Assembly: GCA_965637545.1 (NCBI GenBank)
Contig: OZ281498.1
Location: forward strand, 10,726,001 to 10,790,000
Direction of reading: 5' to 3'
Origin: Phallusia mammillata
Lineage: Eukaryota
Length of the DNA stretch: 64,000 nt
The translations under genes and the position numbers were made by a program. Shown piece by piece: positions 15,745 to 55,537 of the stretch (the stretch's first letter is position 1; each line of letters opens with the position of its first letter). Below the pieces are notes generated by a model that was not told where the DNA came from, did no database searches, and saw nothing but the letters and a program-made list of their open reading frames with translations.

Positions 15745-16107
15745 CAACCCAACCATCGCATCGCTATCAATGCAGTTTGATGCAAGTTCCCTATTAAATG
15801 ACACAAGTTAGCTTCTTCTAAGGTTTTGTGGGTCATAAAAAACGCAGGTAAGTTATTTACAATGTAAAATATGTTTCATCTTAACCTCTTGTAGCATTCA
15901 ATTGTTGCATGAAAAGTAAATCAAACAGATGATATACCAAACACGTTTTGTGCTTTCGGATTACATAAATGGCTCAAGGTTGCATGTAAAGATGACAAAA
16001 TTAATACATTGGTTTGCAAAAGAAATTAATGGAATTTTGTTGAAAGTTTCTTCAACCAGCGACAGCAGTCTCCCTCCGTTGCAACCGATACAACCTTGCG
16101 TGCCACA
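15745..16107 (+). pseudogene. Gene C remnant: exons 2-3 of the Fn3-EGF family
   Basis: Matches gene A exons 2 and 3 with the same CAG>TAG stop as the remnant at 10890; no downstream exons follow. Confidence 0.75.
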
Positions 16108-16419
16108 GTAAGTTTACCGGCTCAACCAGTGGTGGTATAGGGCCGGTCTTCACAGGCAGGTTTGCCTCGAGGGAAGTGATGGAAATAGTTGGCAGCACAC
16201 CAAACAAACACAAACAACCTGATTTGTCAGATAGATTCGGCCGCACAGACTGCATGCCTTTCCGCTCAAGCTGCTTAATTAACTTTATCTGCTGTTATAA
16301 CGGGCTGTCAATACCCAATACAAACTTCCATTTATATTATTAAAAAGTAAAAGCAATAAAAGACGAGCAGATATACATTCGCATCACAACCCCAACTCAA
16401 CTCTAACTCTAACAGCCGG

Positions 16420-19400
16420 CTTCCAAACGTCGTGGGGTCATCTCTTCGACAATTCGTTATCGCGATGCAACATACATTTGCATTTATGAAGTCAGAGGAA
16501 CGTAAAGCAATGAATTCAGCTTACTGTAGTATAAACGTGTGTGTCAATAGCTGTAACAAATATAAGCGGTCTATAGCATAACGTTGCATTTAATCCTTTC
16601 GTAATTCATCCAGCGTGTAAAAAATTGTTTTTAATCAACGTCAATTTATGTTTATGTAACTGTTATAGAATAAGAACAAATTGAACAATTGAATGAGTTA
16701 AGTTAAAGTTATTCAGATAAAAGCAAGAATAAATTTGAATTTAGCAAACAAGGAGCAAACCAAATGGTGCAAAAACAAATCAAGTAGGCAGTAACTGATC
16801 TGTGAACTTGATGGAACATAAGTTTTTTTGAACGTAATTACAAACTTGCATAACATTTTCGCATTTTATGAGCTCTATTCACGCCAAATTAGCCACATTA
16901 TGTAACGAATTGATCTTTGCAAATTAGCCTTAGGTAAGTGCGCTTTCGTCAAACAGTCCGCATTAAAAAGTAAAAGTTTATCGGAGGTTTTTAACGAGCT
17001 TCGCACGCAATCAGGAGAAAAAGTTCGCACTTACTCTTGCGAGCAAATGTCATTCTCTTTGAAATATTTTTTATCTCTGAGAGTTTTGCAAATTTAAAAA
17101 GAATTTTATCGTCACGGTGACAGGTGGATTCGGTATAAGGCCTTCAATAAGCCTGCTGTTTTAAGATTTATATATGGGTGCGCTCTGATCGTTGGTCTGC
17201 ATGAACGCTTCAGAGCTGATCCCAGTTATGAATTTAAGTACATCTTAATTATTATTACTCACCCTTTTTGTAGTGAACACAAAAAGGTGTTTATTTCAAT
17301 AGGTGGCGCGCGGTAGACGTGCAGCACTAAATGATGACCTAACTGTGCAAGAAAAGTTCGACTTTTACCAAGAAGAAAATAAAGTCTAGAAGTAGCAACA
17401 AGATTTTGCAAACTCGTAATAGTAATGTTACAAAATGTCTTTGCAAAATAAAACATGATACAGGTCTTGTACATCCAGTTGTGTGGTTAAGAAGATTTTT
17501 GAGCAACAATAAATTGTAGGTCCTTGATTAGAGATTAAAGATAAGGCAAGATTTGATCATAAACATTACTGCCAGGGTACTAGTGTATATAGAATACATC
17601 GTTAAAAAGCCTCAGTGCTTTATATACAGTGTTCTACAGCTTGACGATGTACTTTATATACACCAGTACTCTGGCAGTAATGTTTATGATCAAATTATTT
17701 TTCATGTCCGTGTATAGTGTTCCTAAGGCAAGATTACTGACATTTACAGCATAACAAAGTGCTAGACAAGCGGAATTAAAACGATTTATTTATAAAGCCA
17801 AACAACTGTCTGGTGCAAAAACGCTGCCGATTGTATAACTTTTACGCTCAGCTTGTTGTAATTGCAAAACTTTAGATCAAGGGTCAGCAACCTTATCATG
17901 TTTGTGACACACCAAACGATTTGCAAAATTATGTTCCTCTTGGTACAAAATGCACAGTTCTAAATATTTTTAGGGCAAAAACCCCGTTATGAGAAATAAA
18001 ATCAACAGAAGGGATGCAACTTGGTGCCGTACAACAATAAAACAATGAGTAACGCAAACTTAAAGATAAAAGCAATTGTGAATATGTTCACCTATGTTTG
18101 ATAAAAATCAAGAAAATGCATTGCGGGTTTCCAGCAGGTATGATGTAAGTCCAAGTACAGGATAGTCGTGGGGCCACGTTTCTTTGACAATTCGTTACCG
18201 TGATGCAAATTACAATTGCATTTATGACGTTAGAGGACCGCAAATCGTCCAGCGTACAATCGTTAAATCAACGTCAATTTCGACGGCACAAATTAAACAA
18301 TTGAATGAATTAAGAAAAATTTATTCAAAATAAAGCAGGAATTATTTTCAATTTAATAACAATAAGGACCAAAGCAAATGGTACAAAAACAAAGCAAGTA
18401 ACCAGGTGTAATCGAAACGAAACGAAATTTCGTTTTTTAAAACGAAAGTGAAAACGAAATGAAAAAACTCCATACAAAAACATAGGCTGAATATGCCCTG
18501 ATGGCACCTGTTGCTTTTTGCACGTAATTACATACTTGCGTAACACGTTCACAGTTGTAAGAGCTTTGATCACGCCACATAACTCACATTATGTAACGAG
18601 TTGATGATTTAAGTGCAAACATGCATACTTGACAGTAGCCTTAGGCAACAGCGTTATCGTCGAACGCTTCTAGTCTAAAAGTGTACACTTGTTTATCGTA
18701 GGTATTCAACTGAGCTTCGCACGTAATCAGGAGAAAAAGTTTGCACTTAACTCCCGCGAGTAAATGTCATTCTCTTTAAAATATTTACTGGCGGTTGATT
18801 TCTCAATAGCACGGTTTCCACTTCCGAGAGTTTTGCAAGGCTTAAAAGGGGTTTTAACCTTGTTTTGCGCTAAAACGTTCACCAAGCCAAAAATAGCTGC
18901 GCAACGTTCAGATGTTACAAGCGCATCAAAGTTGACGGCGCAATTGGTGGATAGGTAGTAGAATCGCTGCAGCTTTAACGTTACTACAAGCGTTACAACC
19001 TTGGTTAACAAACTTTTATAACTCTGTGATGGAACACAATTAGCTGTTTTAAAAAAACTGCATTACCTAACTAATAAATCACAGTACGCCAGGCCCATTG
19101 AAGGCGCTATACCGAATCAGCCGGTCACCAAGCATTCACCACCATATGGCAAGGCGTAGGCTAGATTTTTCTGGCGTACTGTGATTTATGTATGAGTGTG
19201 CCGTGATCGCTGGTCTGCATAGACGCTTCAGGGCTGATCCCAGTTTGTTCATCTTACCTAACTAACAATGTAATCCTCAAAGTAACAGCCTGATCACGCC
19301 TTCCATAAGCCTGTTGTTTTATGATTTATATACATATGGGTGTGCCGAGTTCGTTGGTGCTGCATGAACGTTTAGGCTGATTCTAGCTATGATCATATGT

Positions 19401-20560
19401 TCATCTTAACTAATTCTGGTCAATCCGGCGATTCTCTACTTCCAAGCTGACATTTTCACCACACAAGGCAGGTAACGATACTTGTGATTTAACTTCCGAC
19501 AGGATTCTTTAATGAGCGTGTGTATAGTTCTGCTGGTAGAGCGCAAAAACCGAAAAGACTCCTGTCTTGGTTTCGATTCCCGCCGCAGGCTAGATTTTTC
19601 AGGCCCATACGCTTGATGCCATATTGGAATTCTTTGTGACCGGCTGATTCGGTATAACGCCTTTAATAGGTCTATGGAACTATGAATGACATACGTGAGT
19701 GTGCCTTGATCTCTAGTCTTCGTACACGCTTGAGGCCTGATATCCCCGTTATGAATTGATGTACATCTTAATTATTTTTATATACCTTTTTATGTTGTGA
19801 ACACAAAATGTGTTTATTTCATTATAGATGTCGCGCGGCAGACGTGCAGCATTAGATGATGACGTAGCAGTGCTGGAAAACGTCAACTTTGATCAGAGAG
19901 GAAAATGAAGTCATGAAGTAGCAACAAGATTTTACAAACCTTTAATAATCATGTCACACAATTTCTTTGCAAAATAAAACAAAATACAGGTCTTGTACAT
20001 CCAGTAGTGTGGTGTAGAGGATTTTTGATCAAAAATAAATTGTAGTTTTATTCAAGATAAAGGGAAAGATTAATATGATAAAACTGATATACAGCATGAC
20101 AAAATACTGGAAAAAGCGGAAATAAAACAACTCTTTTATGAAGGGAAACAAGCGTCTCGTGAAAAACCTTGCAACAAAGCAAATGCTGCTGATCATATGA
20201 TTTACATGCTCGGCTCGTTGTAATTGCAAAACCGAGGTAAGAAGGCGTCAACCCTGCCATTTTTGTGACACGCCAAACAATTTGCTAAACTATGTTCAAC
20301 TAGGTTCCAATTTCAGGGTTCTAAATATTCTGAGCAAAAAATGCAAGTCAGTATTTGAGTGTAAAACATCGCAACGTTTCGACTTTTGTCATCGTCCGTG
20401 AAATAAAGCCAACGGAAGTGATGTAACGTGGTGCCGAGCAACATTAAAAAATGGCGAAGTGAGGTCAAAGACAAAGGCAATTAAGCGGAAATGTTCATCT
20501 TTTATTACATTGCTGGTTTGCACTGCTTATGATGTAAGTTCAAGTACAGGCTCGATTATA
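16420..20560. repeat. Two diverged tandem copies of a ~1.75-2.4-kb intergenic unit (starts ~16430 and ~18165)
   Basis: Shared blocks such as GTCGTGGG..CACG..GACAATTCGTTA.CG.GATGCAA and TTCGCACG.AATCAGGAGAAAAAGTT.GCACTTA. The same pair recurs at ~30950/32790 and ~48165/50005. Confidence 0.75.
19514..19775 (+). mobile_element. Putative tRNA-derived SINE
   Basis: A-box-like TAGTTCTGCTGG (19524-19535), B-box-like GTTTCGATTCC (19570-19580), and a body ending CATCTTAATTATT. 5'-truncated matches to the body at ~17113, 19190, 19290, 31906 and 49123. Confidence 0.6.
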
Positions 20561-21510
20561 TCTCTATTTTTATTGATATTTAAATCAGCTGGCACAATTA
20601 ACAACAACTAAACAAGTTGAGATTTCAAGTCGCTGGTTTAGACATTTGCTTTGACCATCTCAAATTCCCTTCTTAAAGCATTATCGTTTCAGTCACCCCC
20701 TTTTTCAAAAAAATGTTGTAATTTTGAAATTCTAGTGGGGGTCAAGTGCCTCTTGCCAATACGTGCCGGCGCCCATGATCGTTCCGGCGCCCATGAACTG
20801 CATGTTTTTTAAAGTCAAATCATTACTGGGAAAGAGACTACAACACTAGCTAGATTTTTTAACTGACTTGAGAATCAATTCCAAATGCCGAGTTAATTTC
20901 TGTCTTTGTCATGTGCGCGTTTTAATTAGGCCTATACTGTATAGGCTATACAGCGTTTAACCCTCCTTTTGCATAGCGGTCAGTCCTCAAGCACAAAATA
21001 TTAAGCAGAGACCTCTAAACTTTTTTGAGTCCTCTTTTGGAACAGGATGAACTTTGCTGCGTACCGTACGTATAGCAATTTTTTCCAGTAACTACAGTTA
21101 CTTAGCTAGGTAAATTTATTTAAAAACATGTACGGATACAAAGTCCGGCCCGAATCAAGCCCTTAACAAAGTGTTTGTGACTTGGTTCAAATGTTTGCGT
21201 TTCTCAATGCGAGCACTTTTATAGTATATCCAGTTTTCTTATACAGCTGCATAAAATTGAAATCGCACAAGTTAACACAATTATATCGCGTTAGTGTTTT
21301 ATTGTTAATGAAATGTACATAAATCGAAAACACTTAGGACGTTTCTGAAAATCAGATGTTGATCTTTACTTCTTCCCATTATAGGTTCTGAAAACATATA
21401 GATTTTATTTACCTGTGGCGATGGTAAGGTTAAACCGATATAACATATGTTTCACAACATTGATTTGGATCACTGAAAAAATACAGACAACTAATATTTC
21501 CCTGTTGTAC

Positions 21511-22911
21511 TTACGTGGTTTTCAAGACACGAATGCGGTAAACTTGATTTGCCCATGATCCTCCTTCACCGTCATGTCCACAGTTAGTGCTAGCTCCATA
21601 TTTGTTGTAAGTCAGATCGGCGTCAGGTGCTCCAGCGCACCAACCACCGTGTTGCAGTGCAAAGACTTCATATCCTCGCGCATGCGCAGCTTGAATACAT
21701 TTGGCGATGGCGTCGCGGCGTGAGCCGTAACTTCCGTCCAGGACTGGGTCGAGTCCCTCAAGTGTCGTAATGGCACGATTTGATGTGTCTCTCCAACACC
21801 CGAGATTGTCAAGAACAACTGAAAACAAAAATATGTTGTTCGTTTATTCAATTTCATGAAAACATTTCTTATTATGACATAATAGGTTGAACGATTTTTT
21901 GTCGTTGAAATATTTTTGTGTTTTCACCCATAGCTTCTCACCTTCGGAAATAGAGGCGATTTCGTAAACCTGATTGGCCCAACTACCCCCTTCACCGTCA
22001 GACCCACATCCGCTGCTTCCCCCATATTTACGGTAAGTATCACGGGCTGTGGATGAACTGGCGCACCAACCTCCGTGCTAAAAGAAAGAAATAGCAAAAA
22101 TTATCGGAAAATAATTCTATTTAACATATAAACTGATAACATATATTTGAAAACATTCTGCTACAGAGCTCGAATTGACCATGATATTTAGGTTTCAGTT
22201 TTATGTCTAGTGTTGTTGATGATGACACATTTGTTTTTCAACAACTGTCGCGTTATTAGGAAAATTCTTGTAGCAATCCTTAATTTTGCTTGACAGTTTA
22301 ACGAATAAAAATGTTTTGATATAAAAGGATGAAGCCAACAAATGATAAGTAAGCTGTCGACAGTGTACAGCGTGTCGACCTAAAGGGTTTCATCAGTGCA
22401 GCTGGTGACAAGAGATAAGCCGTATTGGCTTGTGTTGCCATCTAACGGTACAGCAGTTTGTTTTGAGTATCATATTTTCATCAAAAAATCGTGTTTTTGC
22501 GTTACCTGAAGAGCAAATACGTCATCGCCATGGTTGTGAGCGACTCTGGCGCATTTTGCAATCGCGTTGGATCTTGAACCGTAGCTGCCATCAAGAATAG
22601 CATCTCCTTCTCTCGTAGGAATTGCTCTGGTCCCGGTGTCTTCCCAACATCCGAGATTGTTGTAAGTAACTACATCAAAAAATTGCATAGTTATGAATCC
22701 AATACTTTAAATTAGTCAACAGCTTGTTGATTATAAAGATATGTTTACTCGCATTGTGAGTTGAATATGCATCAACCTATTTTAACAATTTGTACGGATG
22801 TAACTACTTTGCACTTTTGGTTGTTACACCATTTAATTTACCTGGGTAATAAATCACTGCGCTTGCAGCCCCAATGAAAACATACGCGATTGTCAAACTG
22901 AATATCTTCAT
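21511..22911 (-). CDS. W1: secreted protein with two WSC-like domains, 225 aa, intact
   Basis: Coding exons 22911-22842, 22669-22506, 22077-21942, 21818-21511 (678 nt, GT-AG, in phase). Signal peptide MKIFSLTIAYVFIGAASA; two repeats of GCWxD..RAI...EG...LDGSY..R..AIAKC..FALQHGGWC..Y.KYG....C..DGEGGSWANQVY. Confidence 0.88.
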
Positions 22912-23139
22912 CGTAACTGAAACAAAATAAAGATGTATGAATAAACCAACTTTGATTTTTAAATAACAAAATCATATTTAATACCGTTGAAATCGTATGC
23001 TGTTGCATTTCGGTCTAAGTGCTGACATTAAATATTACTTTGTTGAAATGCAGTAATAATTAGATTTATTGTAGAAAAATGTTACCTTTTGTAGACAGTC
23101 GACTTGTGACGGTTTCTCAAAGTAAAGTTGTTGTTGATG

Positions 23140-23311
23140 AGTCGATGAAACTGATGATTTTGCTCAACAAACCTCCACTCTTTTATATCAGTAACTTGGT
23201 AATTTCCGTCGGTTCTCCAGGCACCTTTTCTTGCTTGTAATGCAGTGGTTATTGACTCACTCGCCTGGTCGAGTTGTTTACGCTCAGATATATTTTCCTC
23301 CGGCAATTCCC
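23140..23311 (-). promoter_or_regulatory. Core promoter of W1: TATA box, Inr-like TCAGT, AP-1 and kB-like motifs
   Basis: TATAAAA on - at 23187-23181, TGAGTCA on - near 23253-23259, GGGAATTGCC on - at 23311-23302. A non-coding first exon ends at a GT donor near 23084. The layout is conserved in all five paralogs, but the exact AP-1 heptamer occurs only in W1-W3. Confidence 0.55.
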
Positions 23312-23857
23312 TGTTGTTTTTCGATGCAAAGTGAAAATTGTAAGTACTTCGAAAATCTTGACGAAAACCGGTCCTGGATAAACACAGTCGAAATCACCCT
23401 GGTGGTGTTTTTGCCAGTTTCGAAAAAACAAAAAGACGAGTTTCGGAAATCTCTGCCTTTGCTCGAAACCAAGCTGTAGTTTTCCACCTTGTCAAGCTAA
23501 TTGCATGTGCGACGAAATCTTCATCATATCTTTATATTGCTGTTTCAACATGTAGCAGCTTATAAATCAATTTGCAATGGAAAACTATTGTAATGTAAAG
23601 GTATGCTGTTCTGCTTAAAGTACAATGTTACATGATCAACGAAACTTTGCAAAACGCACTTGATAAATATCATTTAAATATTTGACTGTGATGCAAAGTT
23701 TCCTAAAGACGCCAAAAATATTATGTCTATTTGTAAGTCCTGCTTTGTAAATATGTGGTAATGGGTTTGAAAGCACACGACAGGAACATATAGGGTAATT
23801 TTTTTAAATGTGCTATTCTGTAAATGTGTGACAATGGGTTCGAAAGCACAACACAGG

Positions 23858-24667
23858 TGTGGCGAAAATATTTCACCTTTAGTTATTTAAGTACACTGTA
23901 CATCATTTGGTATTTGCTTTCGTTTGGTTTGTTTCACATTTTAAAACATGTTTATTTGTGTGTCGTCTCCACAATTGTTTCACATTAATGTGTTTGCTTA
24001 TGTTTCACTTATGTCTAGCTTAAAAATGCGTTTCACCTTTATTACCTTTTTTTAACGTTATTCACACCTTTGTCTTTCTTTCACTCAAACCATATATTTT
24101 CACTTATCGTTGATTCGTTGCTTTGATTTGTTTGTCCCACCGTTTGTTTTAGTTTGCCTCGCCAGTTTCATTTTTCACGCATTATTGTTCTGCCGCATTT
24201 TCTCAGTAATCACCACTCCCGGGTGTGCCTGATAACCTAATCGTATGGAGGACCGTGATTGGTCAATCGCCTATGTGTCGAGGTCGGCATGTAATCGTTG
24301 CATAAGGAGAGGCAGTCTTCTTGTGGGCGTCTAGTGTGCGGTCGTTTTCCTTGTGACGTTGTTTTGATGTGCAGTGGTAGTTCTCAGGTGAAGAGACCTG
24401 GTTTGTTGACGTTTGTGTAACGTTGTACGTGTTTTATCCTATAATATAATACACTGTGAGACGCCCGTTTAGCAAAACCAGTGTTAGGTAGATCCGGCTT
24501 TCGTGGTGAGCCGTTATTGCAGGGTTCTGGACTGTTTACAGAATTGGGGAGACAGTCTCGGGGAATAGAGCAGATTGGCAGGGCTTTTGGGACTTATTTG
24601 GCAAAGATAATACCGCCACCCGAAATCGCTAGACCCAATTCCGGGCTGTCAAAACAATGCGGTAACA
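23858..24667 (+). mobile_element. Solo LTR (810 bp), copy 1
   Basis: TGT...ACA ends with 4-bp TSD CAGG (23854-23857, 24668-24671). The empty site ACACAGGCATTTATCAACG is visible at 53797-53815. Confidence 0.9.
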
Positions 24668-24683
24668 CAGGCATTTATCAACG

Positions 24684-33719: not shown

Positions 33720-33852
33720 CGGTCGTACGGTACGCTTTTGGTACGGTGGTACGCACTGGTGAAGCACCGTACCACATACCGTACCCATACCTCAGCTTTC
33801 TTGGCGTACCGCACCACAGTACCGTGCTGAATTTTTCTACGTACCCTACAGC
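33720..33852. repeat. GTACC/GGTAC-rich degenerate repeat patch, probably a non-autonomous element remnant; second copy at ~50938-51069
   Basis: Dense CGTACC/GGTACG motifs in both orientations; only a short trace exists at ~21058 in segment S1. Confidence 0.45.
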
Positions 33853-42996: not shown

Positions 42997-43080
42997 GTTA
43001 AAAAGTAAAACTGTAAAACACTAAAACCATACAAAATCGAGTTCTCACCACGGAGTGACCACCTACAAGCGGTAGCAGGG

Positions 43081-43097
43081 TCCTGGCGTGCTCGCCA
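43081..43097 (-). other. Primer-binding site of Gypsy B (TGGCGAGCACGCCAGGA)
   Basis: Lies 2 nt inside the 5' LTR. The + strand TCCTGGCGTGCTCGCCA resembles the 3' end of metazoan tRNA-Arg(ACG); tRNA identity is inferred from memory. Confidence 0.7.
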
Positions 43098-43988: not shown

Positions 43989-46900
43989 TGTAGTGAATTT
44001 GTGACGTATTTATACGCTTGGGTGGTTTTCTACTACGTAGTCTTTCTTGTACCTCTCCACCTTCTTGGAGGTCATTCTAGTTACGCGCGCATGCTGTGCG
44101 GTTGTGCTTTTGGCTCCTGGCAATAAAACACTACATGGTGTCAGAAGTGTTGGATTTGCAATGGAATTTCCAAGCAACAAACAAGAAATGGATTTTCACA
44201 ATGGAAACGTTGCCGAGAATTTTCGGAAATGGCGACAAATGATTGAACTGACTTTTTCTGGTCCTTTATCGGCAAAATCCAATGTGGAGAAATGTAGTTA
44301 TCTTTTGCTTTACATCGGTCAGGATGGACGGGACATTTACAATACATGGGAACTCAGTAATGATGAAAGAAAAAATCCGAAGGTAATTCTTGATAAGTTC
44401 GATGCATATTGCAAACCTAAACGAAATCTAGCTATGGACCGGTATAAATTCTTTGTAAGAAATAAAGAGGATCATGAAACAATTGATGCTTATGCAACCG
44501 AGCTAAAGCTGTTGGCAGCTAACTGCGAATTTGGGGACATTAAAGACAGTCTCGTTAGAGATCGCATTATTTGTGGCATTAGAAATGATAGAGTGGTTCA
44601 AAGAATGTTACAGGAACCGGACATGCCGCTAAACCAGTGCATCGACGTGGTTCGGGGAGACGAATTCGCGCAGAGGCAATTAACTTCTTTAAACAAGGAC
44701 GAAAGGTCTCCAATTGATGCTGTGGGGATGGTACCTCGATATTCTACACGTGCTCCCCTCAAGCACTGTTACAAATGTGGAACAAGGCATAGTCGTGAAC
44801 GGAGGTGTCCCGCACAAGGAAAACGCTGTTTCAGCTGCGGTGAATGGAATCATTTTGCAAAGGTGTGCTACAAGTATAGTCAAGGTGAGATTTCATCTGT
44901 TGAAACATTTTCTACCACGATGGACCAAGTTTTTGTGGATATATTCTTTAATAGACTACGTTTATCCATTAGATTCAAACTAGACTCTGGGGCACAAGCC
45001 AGCATCATCCCTCACAGTTATTTCAAAACAGCAATGAAGGACATTCAACTGGAAAGAACAAATGTGACTTTAGTCGCTTATGGCGGATCAGTAATCCGCC
45101 CTGTTGGAAAAGTTAATTTAACATGCAAGTACAAGAATAAAGAAATCACGGAAGTGTTTTACGTTGTCCATTCAAATTCACCACCAATTTTGGGGTTAAG
45201 ACCAAGCATAGAGTTGGGCCTAATAAAAATACTGATGCAAATAAATAAATATATTCCCTGTCAAACTCCCGACTATCTGTGTAAAGAATATTCAGATGTG
45301 TTTGAAGGTATTGGATGTTTTTCAGAGCCTTACCACATTATTTTAGACAACAGTGTTCAACCGTCCGTAAGTCCACCAAGACGTATACCGTTTGCTATTC
45401 AGGAAAAAGTGAAAGACGAACTCGACTACTTAGTGAAAAAGAAAATTATTGAACCTGTATGTGAGTACACTGACTGGGTAAACGCAATTGCAGTTGTTAA
45501 AAAGAAAAAAGGTAGTGTTCGCCTTTGTTTGGATCCACGTCCTCTTAACAGAGCAATCCAAAGAGAACAATATCAACTGCCGGTTATTGACGACATTTTT
45601 AGTAAATTATCTGGTGCCAAATACTTTTCGATATTAGACGGACGATCGGGCTATTGGCAAATTCCGCTCGACTCAGTTTCCTCAAACCTTACTACTTTTA
45701 ACACTATTTTCGGAAAATACAAATTCTTAAGAATGCCATTTGGTCTAAAAATGGCCCAAGACGTTTTTCAACAGAGAATTGAACAAGCCTTGCATGGTTT
45801 ACCCAAACAAGCTGCCATAATCGACGATATATTGCTATGGGCGGACACGTTAGATGAAGCAATAGATAACTTGAGACAAGTGCTGCAACGTTGCCGGGAA
45901 CAAGGTATTAAACTTAATCTTGACAAATGCAAATTTTGCTGTCCGAAAGTAGAGTATTTTGGACATGTGATCGGTCAGAATGGCATTCAGCCCAATCCGA
46001 AACGTATTGAGGCAATATCAAAAATGAAATCGCCAACATCCGTAAAGGAACTTCAGTGTTTTTTAGGAATGGTTAACTACTTGCGCAAATTCTCGCCGCA
46101 GGTTTCCGAAGAGACTTCTGTGTTAAGGCAATTACTCCAACACAAGCAGTGGTGCTGGGAAACAGAACACGAAACAGCTTTCAACGCTGTAAAGAAACAA
46201 GTTACTCAAACTGGTAAAGTACTTAAATTTTACGACTCTAATTCGCCATTAAAAATTCAAGTGGATGCATCGCAACATGGTTTGGGCGCTGTCTTGTTAC
46301 AAGACAATGGTCCTGTCGAGTATGCATCCCGAGCATTAAGCGAAACTGAACAAAAGTACGCACAAATTGAAAAGGAAATGCTAGCAATAGTTTTTGGGTG
46401 CGCAAAGTTTCATCAATATATATATGGCCGACATTTTTCAGTTGAATCCGATCACAAGCCTTTGGAAATCATCTTCAAGAAACCGATTTCGACAGCCTCT
46501 GCTAGACTGCAGCGAATGATGATAAAGATTCAAGATTACGATTTTGCTGTTTCGTTTAAACCTGGAAAAGATATCCCGATTGCAGATGCCCTATCTCGAA
46601 ACCACCCTCAAAACAGTGACGAATCGGACCAATGTGACAACAATTTGCATGTTAATTTTATAGATTTGCCATCAGATGGGATTCATGATCTCAAAGAAAT
46701 TCAACGCGCTGTTGAGATGGACCCATGTATGCCAATGCTTAAAAGGTATATTCTTCACGGTTGGCCCACCGCGCGAAATTCATGCACCCAGCAGACACGT
46801 GATTTTTGGGGATTTCGAGACGAACTGTCTGTAACAGAAGATGTCCTGTTAAAAGGTGAGAGAATCGTTGTTCCTTCGTCTCTGAGACAACTTGTAACAA

Positions 46901-48146
46901 AACGCATTCATGGTGGACACATGGGAATTGTAAAGTGTACAGAAAAAGCACGAGATTTGTATTTCTGGCCCGGAATGACAAATTGCATCCGCGATTACAT
47001 TGCCAAATGTAAAGTTTGCCAATTGTTTCAAAATAAGCACCCAAAAGAACCCTTAGTCAATCATGAAATACCTAGGACGCCATGGGAGCAAGTCGCTATG
47101 GACCTATTTCAATGGAATGGAAATGAATATATAGTTGTAGTGGACTATTACAGCAAGTATTTTGAAGTGGTTTTGTTGACAACTACAACTAGTCCAGCTG
47201 TAGTTTCTCATTTAAAATCTTTATTTTCAAGGCATGGGATTCCGAAGGTTATCATATCAGACAATGGTCCGCAGTTCAACAGTCAAAACTTTGAAGATTT
47301 TTGTACAAATTGGAACATATTACATAAAACGTCGAGTCCATTATATCCACAATCAAACGGTTTGGCCGAGAGAACTGTACAAACTGTAAAACGTTTGTTA
47401 GATAAAGCCTTCAAGTCTAATGAAGACCCGTATTTAAGTTTTTTGCAGTACAGGAATACGCCGATCGGAAACGAAGGCTCGCCAGCGCAATTGCTGATGG
47501 GGAGAAGATTAAGAGAATTGTCACCTATGACATCCAGACATCTTGAGCCAAGGACTGTGCCTGTATCAGTCGCACAACAATATATGCGTGAGAGGCGGAA
47601 CCAACAGAAGAAGTATTTTGATAGAGGTGCTCGACCACTTCCACCACTTCAAACTGGAGACAAAATCTATCACCGACGTGACAAAAATCTTGAACCGGCC
47701 ACTGTTATCAAAGCCTCTCACAAGCATCGTTCTTACATCATTAAGGATAAAAAAGACGATTTGCTCAGGCGAAATCGACGGTTTCTGTACAAGGCTCGGT
47801 TTGAGCCCATTATCCCTCACACAGAAGATGTCGAAAGAAATGATGACGCTCGGAGTGCTTCACTGGAAGGTTCAACATACCACACTCGGTCTGGTCGGAC
47901 TATACACGCACCGCAGCGATTTAGCGAATAGTGTTACGTATTTTTCGTTTTGTCTGTTATTGTTATGTTTGTATTTACAATCTTTCTGAAGAGGGAAGAT
48001 GTAGTGAATTTGTGACGTATTTATACGCTTGGGTGGTTTTCTACTACGTAGTCTTTCTTGTACCTCTCCACCTTCTTGGAGGTCATTCTAGTTACGCGCG
48101 CATGCTGTGCGGTTGTGCTTTTGGCTCCTGGCAATAAAACACTACA
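43989..48146 (+). mobile_element. Full-length, apparently intact Mag-clade Gypsy retrotransposon
   Basis: Identical 147-bp LTRs (43989-44135, 48000-48146), 5-bp TSD ACAAC, PBS TGGTGTCAGAAGTG (tRNA-Leu-type), PPT GAAGAGGGAAGA; empty site in S2 near 30931. Confidence 0.96.
44161..47931 (+). CDS. gag-pol: Single-ORF gag-pol polyprotein, 1256 aa from the first ATG
   Basis: Tandem Cys/His knuckles CYKCGTRH..RCPAQGKRCFSCGEWNHFAKVC typical of Mag elements, LDSGA protease, IIDD RT, VDASQHGLGAVL RNase H, HGGHMG..CKVC, SDNGPQF and NGLAER integrase; no stops. Confidence 0.95.
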   Translation: MEFPSNKQEMDFHNGNVAENFRKWRQMIELTFSGPLSAKSNVEKCSYLLLYIGQDGRDIYNTWELSNDERKNPKVILDKFDAYCKPKRNLAMDRYKFFVRNKEDHETIDAYATELKLLAANCEFGDIKDSLVRDRIICGIRNDRVVQRMLQEPDMPLNQCIDVVRGDEFAQRQLTSLNKDERSPIDAVGMVPRYSTRAPLKHCYKCGTRHSRERRCPAQGKRCFSCGEWNHFAKVCYKYSQGEISSVETFSTTMDQVFVDIFFNRLRLSIRFKLDSGAQASIIPHSYFKTAMKDIQLERTNVTLVAYGGSVIRPVGKVNLTCKYKNKEITEVFYVVHSNSPPILGLRPSIELGLIKILMQINKYIPCQTPDYLCKEYSDVFEGIGCFSEPYHIILDNSVQPSVSPPRRIPFAIQEKVKDELDYLVKKKIIEPVCEYTDWVNAIAVVKKKKGSVRLCLDPRPLNRAIQREQYQLPVIDDIFSKLSGAKYFSILDGRSGYWQIPLDSVSSNLTTFNTIFGKYKFLRMPFGLKMAQDVFQQRIEQALHGLPKQAAIIDDILLWADTLDEAIDNLRQVLQRCREQGIKLNLDKCKFCCPKVEYFGHVIGQNGIQPNPKRIEAISKMKSPTSVKELQCFLGMVNYLRKFSPQVSEETSVLRQLLQHKQWCWETEHETAFNAVKKQVTQTGKVLKFYDSNSPLKIQVDASQHGLGAVLLQDNGPVEYASRALSETEQKYAQIEKEMLAIVFGCAKFHQYIYGRHFSVESDHKPLEIIFKKPISTASARLQRMMIKIQDYDFAVSFKPGKDIPIADALSRNHPQNSDESDQCDNNLHVNFIDLPSDGIHDLKEIQRAVEMDPCMPMLKRYILHGWPTARNSCTQQTRDFWGFRDELSVTEDVLLKGERIVVPSSLRQLVTKRIHGGHMGIVKCTEKARDLYFWPGMTNCIRDYIAKCKVCQLFQNKHPKEPLVNHEIPRTPWEQVAMDLFQWNGNEYIVVVDYYSKYFEVVLLTTTTSPAVVSHLKSLFSRHGIPKVIISDNGPQFNSQNFEDFCTNWNILHKTSSPLYPQSNGLAERTVQTVKRLLDKAFKSNEDPYLSFLQYRNTPIGNEGSPAQLLMGRRLRELSPMTSRHLEPRTVPVSVAQQYMRERRNQQKKYFDRGARPLPPLQTGDKIYHRRDKNLEPATVIKASHKHRSYIIKDKKDDLLRRNRRFLYKARFEPIIPHTEDVERNDDARSASLEGSTYHTRSGRTIHAPQRFSE

Positions 48147-51100
48147 ACAACCACCTACTTCCAAACGTCGTGGGGCCACGTCTCTTAGACAATTCGTCTC
48201 TTAGACAAACCCGATGCAACATACAATTGGATTTATGACAAATAATTCAGCTTACTCTAGTATTAACGTGTGTTTCACTAGCTTACAGAACAAATATAGG
48301 CGGTCTGCAGTGTAGCGTTTCATATAATCTTTCCGTATGTAACCGAGCGTGCAAAAATCGTGTAATCAAAGTCAATTTATGTTTATGTAACTGTTATAGA
48401 ATAAGAACAAATTGAACAATTGAATAAGTCAAGTTAAAGGTATTCAGATTAAAGCAGGAATAATTTTGAATTTATCAAACAAGAAGCAAACCAAATGGTG
48501 CAAAAACAAATCAAGTAAACAGTACCTGGTCAGTGACCTTGATGGAACCTGGTGTTTTTTGCACGTACTTACATACTTGCGCAACACGTTCGTGGTTTTA
48601 AGAGCTCCTGCCACGCCATATAACCCACATTATGTAACGAATTAATGTTTGAAGTGCAAAAATGCATATCCGAAAATAGCTTTTGACAACTGTGCTATCG
48701 TCAAACATGTTTTTGTGAGGTTTTTTTTTACCGAGCTTCGCACGCAATCAGCAAAAAAAAGTTCGCACTTACTCCTGCGAGTAAATGTCATTCTCTTTAA
48801 AATATTTTTTACCTCTAAGAGTTTTGCAAGTTTTAAAGGGGTTTCATCGTCAGGTTGAACAGTTGTATACTTTTCGAGCAAGATGTGGAACTTCAAATTC
48901 GTTTTGCTGTGTCTTCTATTTGCTTCAATTGCTGTTGTAACTTGCCATTTCATGGACTCCGTGGCAAACAAGTAAGGCTTTAATACCTTCATTAAAATTT
49001 GTTTTTGAAAAAAAGGTGATCATTAAATTGGTTTGGTCATCAGACTTTTATAATTCGGTGATAAGATAAAATTAGCTTTTGACGAAAGCACCTGAAAGCA
49101 TAACTATTAATATAAAGCTCACGGTGACCGGCTGATTCGGTATAAGGCCTTTAATAAGCCTACCGTATTAAGATTTCTATATGGGTGCGCTCTGATTGTT
49201 GGTCTGCATAAACGCTTCAGAGCTGATTCCAGTTATGAATTTGTGTACATCTTAATCATTATTACATACCTTTTACGTTGTGAACACAAAAATGTGTTTA
49301 TTTCAATAGGTGGCGCGCGGTAGACCTGCAGCACTAAATGATGACCTAACTGTGCAAGAAAAGTTCGACTTTTACCAAGAAGAAAATAAAGCCTAGAAGT
49401 AGCAACAAGATTTTGCAAACTCGTAATAGTAATGTTACAAAATGTCTTTCCAAAATAAAACATGATACAGGTCTTGTACATACAGTGGTGTGGTGAAGAG
49501 GATTTTTGAGCAACAATAAATTGTAGATCTTTTGGTTAAAGATTTAAGATAAGGCAAGATTAATATGATCAAACTGAAATACAGCATAACAAAGTGCATG
49601 ACAAAGCGGAATTAAAACGATTTTTTTATAAAGCTAAATAACCGTCTGGTGCAGAAACGCTGCCGATTGTATAACTTTTACGATCAGCTTGTTGTAATTG
49701 CAAAACTTTAGATCAGGGGTCAGCAACCTTATCATGTTTGTGACACACCAAACGATTTGCAAAATTATGTTCCTCTTGGTACAAAATGCACGGTTCTAAA
49801 TATTTTTAGGGCAAAAGCCCCGTTATGAGAAATAAAATCAACAGAAGGGATGCAACTTGGTGCCGTACAGCAATAAAACAATGAGTAACGCAAACTTAAA
49901 GATAAAGCAATTATGCGAATACATTTACCTATATTTGATGCAATTCAAGAAAATGCGTTGCTGGTTTCCAGCAGTTATATGATGCAAGTCCAAGTATGGA
50001 GTAGTCGTGGGACCACGTTTCGTTGACAATCCGTTACCGCGATGCAAATTTCAGTTGCATTTATGACGTTAGTGGACCGTAAATCGTCCAGCGTGCAAAA
50101 ATCGTTTAATCAACGTCAATTTCTGTTTAAGTAACAGTTATAATAAAGCACACATTAACAATTGAATGAGTTAAGTTAAATTTATTCAAAATAAAGCAGG
50201 AATTATTTTGAACTTGATAACAATAAGGACCAAACCAAATAGTACAAAAACAAAGCAAGTAAGCAGGTGTAATCGACGACGTGACCTTAAAGCACCCGTT
50301 GCTTTTTGCTCGTAATTACATACTTGCTTAACACGTTCACAGTTGTAAGAGCTCTGGTTACGCCACATAACTCACATTACCGAATCCTAAATATCGAAAC
50401 GCACCGTTCTACCGTACCGTACCTTCAGATACACCAATCTGGATCAGGTCGGATAGATTTTATGACATGCACTTAAAGGAGAGGTGTCCAAACAAGCTGC
50501 CCCACTACAAAACCAGCTTTCGAAATAAAGGTTGATGTGCTTTCTATGATGGGTTCGGTCAGAGACAGTGTGTGTTATATATTCAACTGCATGTTTTTTA
50601 AAGTCAAATCATTACTGCGAAAGAGACTACAACACTAGCTAGCTTTTTTTTAACTAACTTGAGAATCAATTCCACATGTCAAATTAATTTCTGATTTTGT
50701 CATGTGGGCGTTTTAATTAGGCCTACAGCGTGTTTAACCCTCATTTTGCATAGCGGTCAGTCCGTAAGCACAAAATATTAAGCAGTGACCTCATAAACAT
50801 TTTTGAATCCTCTTTTGGAACAGGGACATTGTGATGAAATCAGTTCATAAACCTATCAAATCCAAGTTTTTGATATTTTTTATATTATCTGCAAATGTTA
50901 GCGATCCAAAAATGACCGTTTAGATAATTTTTATCACGGTCGTACGGTACGCTTTTGGTACGGTGGTACGCACTGGTGAAGCACCGTACCACATACCGTA
51001 CCCATACCTCAGCTTTCTTGGCGTACCGCACCACAGTACCGTGCTGAATTTTTCTACGTACCCTACAGCCATCCTTTTCCAGTAACCAGCTACTTAGCTA

Positions 51101-51494
51101 GGTAATTTTATTTAAAAACATGTACGAATAAAAAGTCCGGCCCGATTCAAGCCCTCAAAATAGTGTTTGTGACTTGGTTCAAGTGTTTGCGTTTCTCAAT
51201 GCGAGCACTTTTATAGTCTATCCAGTTTTCTTATACAGCTGCATAAAATTGAAGCCGCACAAGTTAACACAATTATATTGCGTTAGTGTATTATTTTTAA
51301 TGAAATGTACATAAACCGAAAACACTTAGGACGTTTCTGAAAATCAGATGTTGATCTTTAAAGAAGTAATTACTTCTTCCCATTATAGGTTCTGAAAAAA
51401 TAAAGATTTTATTTACTTGTGGCGATGGTAAGTTTAAACCGATATAACATATGTTTCACAACATTGATTTGGATCACTGAAAAAATACAGACAA

Positions 51495-52863
51495 CTAATA
51501 TTTCCCACGAATGCGGTAAACTTGATTTGCCCATGATCCTCCTTCACCGTCATGTCCACAGTTGGTGCTAGCTCCATATTTGTTGTAAGTCAGATCGGCG
51601 TCAGGTGCTCCAGCGCACCAACCACCGTGTTGCAGTGCAAAGACTTCATATCCTCGCGCATGCGCAGCTTGAATACATTTGGCGATGGCGTCGCGGCGTG
51701 AGCCGTAACTTCCGTCCAGGACTGGGTCGAGTCCCTCAAGTGTCGTAATGGCACGATTTGATGTGTCTCTCCAACACCCGAGATTGTCAAGAACAACTGA
51801 AAACAAAAATATGTTGTTCGTTTATTCAATTTCATGAAAACTTTTCTTATTATGACATAATAGGTTGAACGATTTTTTGTCGTTGAAATATTTTTGTGTT
51901 TTCACCCATAGCTTCTCACCTTCGGAAATAGAGGCGATTTCGTAAACCTGATTGGCCCAACTACCACCTTCACCGTCAGACCCACATCCGCTGCTTCCCC
52001 CATATTTACGGTAAGTATCACGGGCTGTGGATGAACTGGCGCACCAACCTCCGTGCTAAAAGAAAGAAATAGCAAAAATTATCGGAAAATAATTCTATTT
52101 AACATATAAACTGATAACATATATTTGAAATCCATGATATTTAGGTTTCAGTTTTATGTCTAGTGTTGTTGATGATGACACATTTGTTTTTCAACAACTG
52201 TCGCGTTATTAGGAAAATTCTTGTAGCAATCCTTAATTTTGCTTGACAGTTTAACGAATAAAAATGTTTTGATATAAAAGGATGAAGCCAACAAATGATA
52301 GGTAAGCTGACGACAGTGTACACCGTGTCGACCTAAAGGGTTTCATCAGTGCAGCTGGTGACAAGAGATAAGCCGTATTGGCTTGTGTTGCCATCTAACG
52401 GTACAGCAGTTTGTTTTGAGTATCATATTTTCATCAAAAATCGAGTTTTTGCGTTACCTGAAGAGCAAATACGTCATCGCCATGGTTGTGAGCGACTCTG
52501 GCGCATTTTGCAATCGCGTTGGATCTTGAACCGTAGCTGCCATCAAGAATAGCATCTCCTTCTCTCGTAGGAATTGCTCTGGTCCCGGTGTCTCCCCAAC
52601 ATCCGAGATTGTTGTAAGTAACTATATCAAAAAATGGCATATTTATGAATCCAATACTTTAAATTAGTCAACAGCTTGTTGATTGTAAAGATATGTTTAC
52701 TCGCATTGTGAGTTGAATATGCATCAACCTATTTTAACAATTTGTACGTATATAACTACTTTGCACTTTTGGTTGTTACACCATTTAATTTACCTGGGTA
52801 ATAAATCACTGCGCTTGCAGCCCCAATGAAAATATACGCGATTGTCAAACTGAAAATCTTCAT
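51495..52863 (-). CDS. W3: secreted two-WSC-like-domain protein, open frame, variant C-terminus RIRGKY*
   Basis: Four coding exons equivalent to W1 with intact splice sites; shares the 26-bp 3' deletion with W2 but not the frameshift. Confidence 0.83.
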
Positions 52864-55140
52864 CGTAACTGAAACAAAATAAAGATATATGAATAAACCG
52901 ATTTTTAAATAACAAAATCATATTTAACACCGTTGAAATCGTATGCTGTTGCATTTCGGTCTAAGTGCTGACATTAAATATTACTTTGTTGAAATGCAGT
53001 AATAATTAGATTTATTGTAGAAAATTGTTACCTTTTGTAGACAGTCGACTTGTGACGGTTTCTCAAAGTAAAGTTGTTGTTGATGAGTCGATGAAACTGA
53101 TGATTTTGCTCAACAAACCTCCACTCTTTTATATCAGTAACTTGGTAATTTCCGTCGGTTCTCCAGGCACCTTTTCTTGCTTGTAATGCAGTGGTTTTTG
53201 ACTCACTCGCCTGGTCGAGTTGTTTACGCTCAGATATGTTTTCCTCCGGCAATTCCCTGTTGTTTTTCGATGCAAAGTGAAAATTGTAAGTACTTCGAAA
53301 ATCTTGACGAAAACCGGTCCTGGATAAACACAGTCGAAATCACCCTGGTGGTGTTTTTGCCAGTTTCGAAAAAACAAAAAGACGAGTTTCGGAAATCTCT
53401 GCCTTTGCTCGAAACCAAGCTGTAGTTTTCCACCTTGTCAAGCTAATTGCATGTGCGACAAAATCTTTATCATATCTTTATATTGCTGTTTCAACATGTA
53501 GCAGCTAATAAATCAATTTGCAATGGAAAACTATTGTAATGTAAAGGTATGCTGTTCTGCTTAAAGTACAATGTTACATAATCAACGAAACTTTGCAAAA
53601 CGCACTTGATAAATATCATTTAAATATTTGACTGTGATGCAAAGTTTCCTAAAGACGCCAAAAATATTATGTCTATTTGTAAGCCCTGCTTTGTAAATAT
53701 GTGGTAATGGGTTTGAAAGCACAAGACAGGAACATATAGGGTAATTTTTTTAAATGTGCTATTCTGTAAATGTGTGACAACGGGTTCGAAAGCACAACAC
53801 AGGCATTTATCAACGTACTTGCTATTTAGCGTGCAGACAAAGTCTTGTTAATACTCGAATCTTTTTACAACACTATATTGTTATATTAACTGAATTAACT
53901 CGAAGATGACAATATGAAATCGTTTAAACAAAAAAACAACTTTGTACATTGGTACAGCTGACAAACGATTGTCAGAATGGCAATAAACACAGCCCATTGT
54001 GGCAATGGTAATATACCACAACGTAACAACTCAACGCAATTTTCCCAACTTGTAGTTCAACGGTCAAGCGGCTTTAAAGGTCAAAGTATTGACGTCGCTC
54101 AAATCGAAAGTTTCGCATTGAAGTTTCGCCTAGTTTGTGCGTCGTGACTCTCTCCATACCTGGGAATGTTGAAATGAGGTTTTACCAATGGGGTTTCGTG
54201 TGCTTAATTTGCTGAAAAATTCAAATTCCATCCAAAACAAATGATTTTAATTTAAGACATGTGGGGGAATATGTAAACAAAAACGTGATGATGCCCCTTG
54301 ATATGCCGTCATTGTGACGTTAGTCAGCTGTTTTCGCTTACGCAAACGTGCGGAAAAGTACCACACCGGCACTTTACTTCATTTCCGAGTTTTGCAAGGT
54401 GACAAGCGGTGCGAGTTTTTCTATGGTTGTTTTTACCTCGCCTCTATCATAACCGAGCATTTTCGACAAACTTGGAAGTTGGGCCACGAAGTCCCCGTAA
54501 AGGCATTAGTCTGCTGTATGAATGTACAAAGCTGTTTTTTGTTGAAACCATTTTATACATCCATTGTCATCTGAGAGTTATTTCAATTAAGATAACAATA
54601 TAGTGTCGTAAAAAGATTCGATTATTAACAAGACTTTGTCTGCACCTTTAATAGCAAATTCGTCGATAAAAAATTGCCCTATATGTTCATGTCTTGTGCT
54701 TTTAAACCCATTATCACATATTTACAAAGCAGGACTTACAAATAGACATAATATTTGTGAAACTTTGCATCACAGTCAAATATTTAAACGCTATTTATCA
54801 AGCGCTATGTTGTTTAATAGATCATGTAACGTTGTACTTTTAGCCGAACAGCACGCCTTTACACTACAATATTTTTTTCCATTGCAAATTGATTTATTCT
54901 CTGCTACAAAAAAAGCAACATAGACATATGGTGGAAATTTTTGTGGCACATGCAATTGGCTGGGTAGACTGGAAAATTACAGCTTGGTTTGGAGCAAAGG
55001 TAGAAATTTTCCGTAACTTGTTTTTTCGAAACTATGTAAAACACCACCAGGGTGATTTTGACTGTGTTTTTCCAGGACCGGTTTTCGTCGAAATTTTCGC
55101 ACAAGCATTTACTTCTTTGACTTTGCATCGAAAAACGACT

Positions 55141-55305: not shown

Positions 55306-55537
55306 CATCGACTCATCAACAACAACTTTCCCTTAAGAAATCGTCAGAAGTCGCGTGTCTACAAAAGGTAACATTTTTCTACAATAAATCTAATTATTAC
55401 TTCAAATAACAAAGTTATTTTCATATTAACACTAAGACCGAAATGCAAAAGCATACGACTTCGACGGTGTTAAATATGATTTGGTTATTTAAAAACAAGA
55501 TTGTTTATTCATATATCTTTGTTTTGTTTCAGTTACG

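What the first reader, a model, noticed from the sequence alone, without database searches (positions are those of the whole stretch)
16053..53815. Gene-family amplification with a hybrid retrotransposon at every junction
Seen: the segment running from mid-exon 3 of the Fn3 gene (CAACC, 16053) to a site upstream of the WSC-like gene (CAACG) occurs three times. Both junctions are filled exactly by the same Gypsy element, with left flank ...TATCAACG and right flank CAACCAACAGC... These flanks are not a target-site duplication and come from ancestral sites several kb apart; the uninterrupted versions are at 53811 and 16053. The element's two LTRs differ from each other (many substitutions, a 20-bp indel) far more than A differs from B at the same LTR. 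Inference: two independent insertions on different haplotypes recombined ectopically, duplicating the gene between them, and later unequal crossover added a third copy. This would be a nucleotide-resolution record of LTR-driven copy-number expansion of a host gene.
Basis: partly seen in the sequence, partly recalled or inferred. Interest (0 to 1): 0.78.

Follow-up and report, generated by a model that had tools for sequence, protein, structure and literature searches.

The report
Recombinant Gypsy element between tandem gene copies
An old Gypsy retrotransposon sits twice between tandem copies of a WSC-like gene and a beheaded surface-protein gene; its two ends touch two different host sites, the known mark of recombination between separate insertions, and the first "copy" is mostly an older paralogue.

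Summary
The core observation holds. A degraded minus-strand Ty3/Gypsy element occurs twice (24684-30846 and 37446-43899), each time with left flank ...TATCAACG and right flank CAACCAACAGC. Relatives elsewhere in the genome make 4-bp target-site duplications, so AACG versus CAAC is not one. Both host sites are continuous in uninterrupted copies or paralogues. The two LTRs differ at 20 of 779 sites plus a 21-bp indel, against 2 sites between the two element copies.

Three points need correcting.
- Only S2 and S3 are full near-identical copies (0.3% apart). S1 shares recent ancestry (1.3%) only over its last 2.5 kb, the WSC-like gene. Its first 5.3 kb is 6.5-20% diverged, which is older than the element.
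- "LTRs differ more than A differs from B" is expected for any old insertion that was later duplicated. The real support is that the left LTR shares derived sites with three solo LTRs and the right LTR does not. The AU tests do not reject sister LTRs (p 0.07-0.23).
- The third unit arose by one unequal crossover inside the WSC-like gene (21989-22152).

A hybrid element from inter-element recombination is likely. Whether that event made the duplication or trimmed an older array is unresolved. This is a known kind of event and of modest interest.

The parts
6161..15900 (+). Two older tandem paralogues (G1, G2) of the Fn3/EGF-like surface-protein gene. They carry the uninterrupted x-site exon at 7042 and 12071.
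   Evidence: Self-BLAST gives 70-93% identity with a period of about 5 kb. Pfam hits to fn3 and EGF are weak.
16053..21330 (+). S1 head: the rest of Fn3-like gene G3 from the x site onward, plus about 2 kb of dispersed repeats. It is an older paralogue of the S2/S3 heads, not a recent copy.
   Evidence: S1 differs from S3 by 6.5-19.5% substitutions. No closer copy exists elsewhere in the genome.
21331..23856 (-). S1 tail: WSC-like gene copy 1 (minus strand) with its upstream region. It differs from the S3 tail by 1.3%.
   Evidence: There are 33 substitutions in about 2520 bp. The ORF at 21511-21828 scores 20.9 bits against WSC, below the Pfam cut-off. The nearest Atlas clusters are cnidarian WSC proteins.
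21989..22152 (.). Interval, in S1 coordinates, that holds the unequal crossover which made the middle unit.
   Evidence: In the three-way alignment the last site where S2 = S3 is 21988, and the first where S2 = S1 is the 25-bp indel at 22153.
23857..24669 (.). Solo LTR of a different LTR family, flanked by CAGG on both sides. It is repeated at 36620-37431 and absent from S3.
   Evidence: Comparison with the empty site is.
24670..24683 (.). Last 14 bp of host sequence before the element, ending in the y-site bases AACG.
24684..30846 (-). Element copy E_A (Ty3/Gypsy). The 3' LTR is at 24684-25465. The 5' LTR is truncated, at about 30279-30846. The reading frames are broken into at least 4 ORFs.
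30847..36619 (+). S2: a beheaded Fn3-like gene copy plus WSC-like gene copy 2. The WSC-like copy carries a +2 frameshift in the exon at 35231-35451. S2 is S3-like on the left and S1-like on the right.
36620..37431 (.). Second copy of the solo LTR of the other family.
   Evidence: It differs from the first copy by 2 substitutions in 812 bp.
37446..43899 (-). Element copy E_B. The 3' LTR is at 37446-38227, the 5' LTR at 43100-43899, and a PBS-like TGGCGAGCACGCC lies next to the 5' LTR. ORFs carry RT, RNase H and integrase domains.
   Evidence: Pfam RVT_1 at 1.5e-34, rve at 3.5e-12 and Integrase_H2C2 at 3e-17.
43900..43988 (+). First 89 bp of S3, starting at x-site CAAC, before the young element.
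43989..48146 (+). E2: a young, unrelated Gypsy element found only in S3. It has 147-bp LTRs that are 100% identical, a 5-bp TSD (ACAAC) and one 1294-aa ORF.
48147..53815 (+). Rest of S3: the beheaded Fn3-like gene copy and WSC-like gene copy 3, ending at the uninterrupted y site (TATCAACG at 53808-53815).
53816..63400 (+). Two older tandem units (D1, D2), each with a plus-strand WSC-like paralogue. D2 shows that the y site is continuous.

Best explanation
SHOWN. A degraded minus-strand Ty3/Gypsy element is joined at the exact tip of its 3' LTR to host site y (AACG, upstream of a minus-strand WSC-like gene). At the exact tip of its 5' LTR it is joined to host site x (CAAC, inside a short exon of an Fn3/EGF-like surface-protein gene). 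The family makes 4-bp target-site duplications, and both host sites exist uninterrupted in the window.

INFERRED. Two separate insertions of the family, one at y and one at x, recombined homologously within the element. This left one hybrid element carrying one flank from each site. The result placed a 5'-truncated Fn3-like gene copy and a WSC-like gene behind another WSC-like gene.

I slightly favour the duplication reading, meaning an exchange between homologues or chromatids that duplicated the DNA from x to y. The reason is that the two WSC-like tails differ by 1.3%, which matches the LTR differences private to this element (9 of 780 sites, 1.15%). The other roughly 11 LTR differences are shared with other genomic copies, so they pre-existed.

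The head of S1 is far older (6.5-20% diverged). A further event must therefore have replaced the first duplicated head. One option is a deletion fusing the older paralogue G3 to the first WSC-like gene near 21330. The other is that the two parental haplotypes were already very divergent there.

SHOWN. One later unequal crossover between the two WSC-like genes, within 21989-22152, produced the middle unit and the second element copy. All repeated parts differ by about 0.5%. The middle WSC-like copy is already frameshifted.
For: - The flanks are identical at both element copies.
- 4-bp TSDs appear in 7 of 9 solo LTRs with both LTR ends present and in one full-length relative: CAAG, TGTG, CTAG, CTAT, TTAT, TTGG, GCTG, GTCA.
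- The x and y sites are continuous in paralogues or copies.
- At columns 250, 251, 265, 268 and 375 the left LTR and solo LTRs L002-L004 share derived states, while the right LTR keeps the family's ancestral state. At columns 45-117 the right LTR carries the states of the L007/L009/L010/L024 group.
- ML trees place the left LTR 1.3% from solo L003 and 3.2% from its own right LTR.
- In partitioned trees the right LTR groups with L007 (support 97/94), and the left LTR groups with the solo LTRs (78/86).
- Divergence ladder: head 6.5-20%, LTR versus LTR 2.57%, tail 1.3%, A versus B 0.25-0.64%.
- S2 shows a single switch point.
- The genome holds no other copy of the S head and no haplotig of it.
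Against: - AU tests do not reject sister LTRs (p 0.225, 0.065, 0.15). One clean site (column 340) unites the two LTRs.
- The duplication reading needs an extra, unobserved event to explain the old S1 head.
- Two insertions of a low-copy family within a few kb and in the same orientation are unlikely a priori.
- The 5 bases on the two sides of the element share CAAC, a 1-in-256 coincidence that remains unexplained.
- No parental insertion and no reciprocal product can be observed in a single assembly.
Confidence: 0.5

Rival explanations
1. Deletion rather than duplication. An older interleaved array (Fn3-like G3, WSC-like a, Fn3-like G4, WSC-like b) already existed. Two elements inserted on one chromosome, at y behind WSC-like a and at x in G4. 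Recombination between them deleted the DNA in between, including the 5' part of G4. The two WSC-like genes were later homogenised by a gene conversion of about 2.5 kb.
For: - The S1 head differs from the S2/S3 heads by 6.5-20%, like the older paralogues G1 and G2 (70-93% identical) and far more than the LTRs at 2.6%.
- Divergence steps sharply at about 21330, just beyond the 3' end of the WSC-like gene, so the homogenised tract is the gene itself.
- Recombination between direct repeats on one chromosome needs no second haplotype.
- The region shows tandem duplications of several ages.
Against: - It needs a 2.5-kb conversion between copies that would then have been about 10% apart.
- The match between tail divergence (1.3%) and private LTR divergence (1.15%) would be a coincidence.
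- G1 and G2 have no WSC-like gene behind them, so an old interleaved arrangement itself needs an earlier Fn3-plus-WSC duplication.
Confidence: 0.27
2. One insertion event only. The two ends of a single element cDNA integrated into two different target sites, y on one chromatid and x on the other. The duplication and the element junction arose together.
For: - Both junctions lie exactly at the LTR tips, as integrase would make them.
- This needs one insertion rather than two.
- LTR divergence and tail divergence are of the same order.
Against: - LTRs from one cDNA start identical. Here about 11 of the 20 differences are states shared with other genomic copies, and total LTR divergence (2.57%) is twice the tail divergence (1.3%).
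- The old S1 head is unexplained here as well.
Confidence: 0.08
3. The third unit is an assembly artefact. Two haplotypes of the stretch 'WSC tail, element, head' were laid in tandem, and the real chromosome has two units and one element.
For: - The repeated parts differ by only about 0.5% plus a few indels, a level that could be heterozygosity.
- The switch point lies in a stretch where all copies are nearly identical.
Against: - The window has no gap, and no spare haplotig of the region exists in the assembly.
- The false join would have to pass from an S3-type tail into an S1-type tail. Those differ by a 25-bp indel, an 813-bp solo LTR and different flanks within reach of one long read.
- S1-private and S2-private changes are balanced (6 versus 5), as expected of real copies.
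Confidence: 0.08
4. An ordinary single insertion into a pre-existing junction between two tandem copies that had been joined at the shared CAAC.
For: Both sites share CAAC, which could serve as microhomology.
Against: - A 4-bp TSD at such a junction would give ...TATCAAC|element. The observed left flank has an extra G that matches the next base of the y site.
- The element would have had to land exactly on the junction.
- The LTR site patterns are not explained.
Confidence: 0.02

Closest known systems
Inter-element (non-allelic homologous) recombination between LTR retrotransposons, recognised by complete elements without matching target-site duplications
   Same: The element is complete, with two LTRs, but its flanks do not match and map to two host sites. 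Its own LTRs do not cluster in the family tree. PMC2672092 names this as the test for inter-element recombination.
   Different: Here the recombinant sits inside a tandem gene array in what looks like a cnidarian genome. Uninterrupted copies or paralogues of both host sites are preserved nearby. The LTR test is suggestive but not significant.
Tandem array growth by unequal crossover and gene conversion, as at the maize p1/P1-wr cluster (PMC2686159)
   Same: Two direct copies misalign, and a crossover makes a third, chimeric copy. Polymorphisms shared between repeats trace the exchange.
   Different: This array has only three units and a single mappable switch point. The repeat unit carries a whole retrotransposon.
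HERV-mediated duplication and deletion of the human AZFa region; Ty-mediated rearrangements in yeast (from my own knowledge, not checked here)
   Same: Two proviral copies in direct orientation act as substrates for non-allelic homologous recombination, which duplicates or deletes the genes between them.
   Different: In those cases both parental elements are still present in reference chromosomes. Here neither parental insertion is seen.

Membership tests
Ty3/Gypsy LTR retrotransposon | Two direct LTRs ending in TG...CA | tested here: met
   LTRs of 782 and 800 bp run TGTAACC...TTACA.
Ty3/Gypsy LTR retrotransposon | pol domain order RT, RNase H, integrase | tested here: met
   On the minus strand, ORF 40200-41666 carries RVT_1 and RNase H, followed by ORF 38261-40237 with RNase H, Integrase_H2C2 and rve.
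Ty3/Gypsy LTR retrotransposon | Primer-binding site next to the 5' LTR | tested here: met
   The reverse complement of 43080-43099 reads TTTGGCGAGCACGCCAGG directly after the LTR. This was read by eye and no tRNA was matched.
Ty3/Gypsy LTR retrotransposon | Matching target-site duplication on both sides | tested here: not met
   The flanks are AACG and CAAC, whereas relatives have matching 4-bp TSDs. This shortfall is the finding itself.
Product of inter-element recombination | The two flanks belong to two separate host sites that are each continuous elsewhere | tested here: met
Product of inter-element recombination | The element's own LTRs do not cluster in the family phylogeny | tested here: inconclusive
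   The LTRs are not sisters in any ML tree. Constraining them together costs 6.8 lnL overall and 20.8 + 7.0 lnL by partition, but AU p = 0.225, 0.065 and 0.15.
Product of inter-element recombination | Parental insertions or the reciprocal product exist in the population | not testable with these tools
   Only one assembly is available.
Array expansion by unequal crossover | The middle copy is a chimera of the outer copies with one switch point | tested here: met
   The site pattern changes from 1|23 to 12|3 between 21988 and 22153.
Array expansion by unequal crossover | All parts of the repeated unit are equally diverged | tested here: met
   Divergence is 0.25-0.64% across the head, tail, solo LTR and element, with 60 substitutions in 12.7 kb.
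WSC-domain protein | Pfam WSC (PF01822) above the gathering score | tested here: inconclusive
   The score is 20.9 bits against a cut-off of 27.8, with E = 4e-4, on a single exon. The nearest Atlas clusters are cnidarian WSC proteins, score 0.97.
Fibronectin type III protein | Pfam fn3 (PF00041) above the gathering score | tested here: not met
   The score is 15.4 bits against a cut-off of 25 on one exon of paralogue G1. EGF_3 and EGF hits are also below cut-off.

The most novel reading that the evidence does not exclude
The locus would preserve, at single-base resolution, a gene duplication created in one step. In that reading a retrotransposon's two ends (or two near-simultaneous insertions on different haplotypes) joined two sites 6 kb apart in a cnidarian surface-protein cluster. 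The very old 'head' would reflect hyper-divergent alleles of that surface-protein gene, as at an allorecognition-type locus.
Probability: 0.1. Interest if true: 0.65.

Novelty: new member of a known kind. Interest (0 to 1): 0.33.

Why it matters
This is a clean, datable example in an animal outside the usual models of how LTR retrotransposons and unequal crossover reshape a tandem cluster of secreted or surface-protein genes. It leaves a promoterless gene fragment and extra WSC-like copies, one of which is already broken. It also shows why LTR-LTR divergence should not be used to date elements that lack a target-site duplication. It adds no new mechanism.

Tried and rejected
- LTR phylogeny with AU tests, on the whole LTR and on two partitions. 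The direction fits a hybrid origin but none of the tests is significant.
- Search for a breakpoint inside the element using other full-length copies. They are uniformly 95-97% identical along the internal region, so no step is visible. The close LTR relatives are all solo LTRs.
- The 'daughter' idea, that the three solo LTRs descend from this element and so share its 3' LTR changes. I rejected this as unlikely. They also share the left-LTR states in the U5-side columns 45-117, which daughters should inherit from the 5' LTR. Two of them also have longer private branches (1.7%) than the element's own LTRs.
- A 5-bp TSD with one mismatch (CAACG versus CAACC). I rejected this because the family's TSD is 4 bp.
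- Search of the whole assembly for a closer donor of either S head or for a haplotig. None was found.
- Rfam scan of the perfectly conserved 92-bp repeat core in S1. There was no match.
- A first pairwise count of tail divergence (2.65%) was inflated because the coordinates ran past the homology. The three-way alignment gives 1.3%.
- One Pfam call failed because of wrong coordinates and was repeated.
Exons were searched singly by reference.
Full report
LAYOUT

The window is G000:C5:10726001-10790000, from a 240-Mb assembly. It has no gaps and is 39% G+C. The nearest protein clusters for a host exon are cnidarian.

Self-comparison gives this order along the window:
- Older tandem paralogues G1 and G2 of an Fn3/EGF-like gene (6161-15900).
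- S1 (16053-23856).
- A solo LTR of another family (23857-24669), followed by 14 bp of host sequence.
- Element E_A (24684-30846).
- S2 (30847-36619).
- The same solo LTR again (36620-37431), followed by 14 bp of host sequence.
- Element E_B (37446-43899).
- S3 (43900-53815), split by a young second Gypsy element, E2, at 43989-48146.
- Two older tandem units, D1 and D2, each with a plus-strand WSC-like paralogue.

THE ELEMENT

The ORFs lie on the minus strand. They carry RVT_1, RNase H, Integrase_H2C2 and rve in the Gypsy order. The LTRs are 782 and 800 bp and run TG...CA. A PBS-like TGGCGAGCACGCC abuts the right LTR, so the right LTR is the 5' LTR. Both copies are broken into several frames. 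E_A also lacks 244 bp and 50 bp at its 5' LTR and PBS end.

THE JUNCTIONS

Both copies have ...GCATTTATCAACG|TGTAACC on the left and ...TTACA|CAACCAACAGC on the right.

I checked what target-site duplication the family makes. Seven of nine solo LTRs with both LTR ends present, and one full-length relative, have perfect 4-bp duplications: CAAG, TGTG, CTAG, CTAT, TTAT, TTGG, GCTG, GTCA. The element's flanks, AACG and CAAC, are therefore not a duplication.

The right flank continues a short exon. That exon is uninterrupted in S1 (16053) and in G1 and G2 (7042, 12071), with homology running through the site. The left flank continues in S3 directly into D1 (TATCAACG|TACTTGC). The older D1/D2 junction near 58470 shows the same continuity.

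Each LTR tip is thus joined, to the base, to a different host site. That precision points to integrase at both ends. It argues against an insertion into an older copy-copy junction, which would also leave the extra G on the left unexplained.

ARE THE LTRS FROM ONE INSERTION?

The informative test is the family tree of LTRs, the test named in PMC2672092. I aligned the four LTRs with 13 other genomic LTRs.
- The left and right LTRs differ at 20 of 779 sites plus a 21-bp deletion private to the left LTR.
- Nine differences are private, 3 to the left LTR and 6 to the right.
- About 11 are shared with other copies. At columns 250, 251, 265, 268 and 375 the left LTR and three solo LTRs (L002-L004) share derived states, while the right LTR keeps the family's ancestral state.
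- At columns 45-117 the right LTR carries the states of the L007/L009/L010/L024 group.
- Only one clean site (column 340) unites the two LTRs.

The ML trees agree. The left LTR lies 1.3% from solo L003 and 3.2% from its own partner. In columns 1-130 the right LTR falls with L007 (support 97/94). In columns 181-861 the left LTR falls with the three solo LTRs (78/86).

AU tests do not reject a left-plus-right clade at the 0.05 level (p 0.225, 0.065, 0.15). I therefore regard a hybrid origin as likely but not shown.

The idea that the solo LTRs are daughters of this element fits poorly. They carry left-LTR states in the U5-side columns as well, and two of them have longer private branches than the element's own LTRs.

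THE THREE COPIES ARE NOT EQUAL

S2 and S3 are near-identical along their whole length, with 12 substitutions in 3720 bp of head.

S1 is different. Compared with S3 it shows:
- 6.5-19.5% substitutions from 16053 to about 21330, along with about 2 kb of extra dispersed repeats.
- 7.8% in 21075-21330.
- 1.3% from 21330 to the y site, which is 33 substitutions in about 2520 bp.

The recent tract coincides with the minus-strand WSC-like gene and its upstream region.

No closer relative of either head exists elsewhere in the assembly. The S1 head is therefore an older paralogue, comparable to G1 versus G2. It pre-dates the element, whose LTRs differ by only 2.57%. The simple model in which the element duplicated everything from x to y cannot be the whole story.

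THE THIRD UNIT

In a three-way alignment of the tails, S2 agrees with S3 at every variable site up to 21988 in S1 coordinates. From the 25-bp indel at 22153 onward it agrees with S1. It shares the solo LTR with S1, and S3 lacks that LTR.

This is the expected product of one unequal crossover between the first and last WSC-like genes. All repeated parts are equally young at 0.25-0.64%, with 60 substitutions in 12.7 kb. S1-private and S2-private changes are balanced, 6 versus 5.

The middle WSC-like copy already carries a +2 frameshift in the exon at 35231-35451. The S2 and S3 Fn3-like copies lack everything upstream of x. The 'amplification' has therefore produced at most two intact WSC-like genes in S, plus fragments.

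PUTTING IT TOGETHER

The divergence ladder runs: head 6.5-20%, then LTR versus LTR 2.57%, then tail 1.3% (close to the private LTR differences at 1.15%), then A versus B about 0.5%.

DUPLICATION READING.
- It explains why the tail and the private LTR differences have the same age.
- It explains why the extra LTR differences are shared with other copies.
- It needs one more event to put the old G3 head in front of the first WSC-like gene. That could be a fusion deletion near 21330, or haplotypes that were already very divergent.

DELETION READING. Two insertions in an older interleaved array recombine and remove the DNA between them.
- It explains the old head at once.
- It needs a 2.5-kb gene conversion of the WSC-like gene.
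- It needs an earlier Fn3-plus-WSC duplication, because G1 and G2 have no WSC-like gene behind them.

I cannot separate these two readings from one assembly. I give them about 0.5 and 0.27.

A single cDNA whose ends joined two sites is disfavoured by the shared-site pattern and by LTR divergence being twice the tail divergence.

A haplotype mis-join for the third unit is possible at about 0.5% divergence. It would require a join from an S3-type tail into an S1-type tail that no long read should support, and there is no gap or spare haplotig.

COMPARISON WITH WHAT IS KNOWN

Recombinant LTR elements without matching TSDs are an established category (PMC2672092). So are arrays that grow by unequal crossover with gene conversion (PMC2686159). 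HERV- and Ty-mediated duplications and deletions are classic examples, cited here from my own knowledge. This locus is a tidy new instance, not a new kind of event.

LIMITS

- The gene labels are weak. WSC scores 20.9 bits and fn3 15.4 bits, both below Pfam cut-offs on single exons.

Noticed in passing
window 43989-48146: A young Gypsy element (E2) unrelated to the main one. Its 147-bp LTRs are 100% identical, its 5-bp TSD is ACAAC, and it has a single open 1294-aa ORF with RT, RNase H and integrase domains. It is present in S3 only.
   Followed up: partly
window 4-1998: Fragment of a BEL/Pao-type retroelement with Peptidase_A17, Integrase_H2C2 and DUF5641 hits, in a stretch of 49% G+C.
   Followed up: no
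G000:C6:23554485-23576885: Four LTRs of the same Gypsy family alternate with three internal regions, with spacings of 9.7, 5.9 and 5.9 kb. This is a tandem array of elements sharing LTRs, and so another sign of unequal recombination in this family.
   Followed up: partly
window 19074-19165 (within S1 19075-19790): A 92-bp core that is 96-100% identical at more than 50 loci. At several loci it sits in tandem with a 355-bp spacing (for example C1:20492071, 20492426 and 20492781). It looks like a satellite or SINE, and Rfam gave no match.
   Followed up: partly
window 35231-35451: A +2 frameshift in the first WSC-like exon of the middle copy only. The S1 and S3 copies keep the open frame.
   Followed up: yes
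window 33196-33849 and 50413-51066; partial copy at 20796-21046: A dispersed repeat with many copies genome-wide at 73-86% identity lies between the Fn3-like and WSC-like genes. The S1 copy has lost about 240 bp of it.
   Followed up: partly
window 53805-63400: Two older tandem units (84% identical, period about 4.7-5.2 kb), each with a plus-strand WSC-like paralogue placed head-to-head with the S3 copy. A 180-bp fragment of the WSC-like upstream region at 58305-58487 marks the old duplication boundary.
   Followed up: partly
E_B internal, near window 41771: Other full-length family members carry about 195-200 bp here that both copies in the window lack.
   Followed up: no
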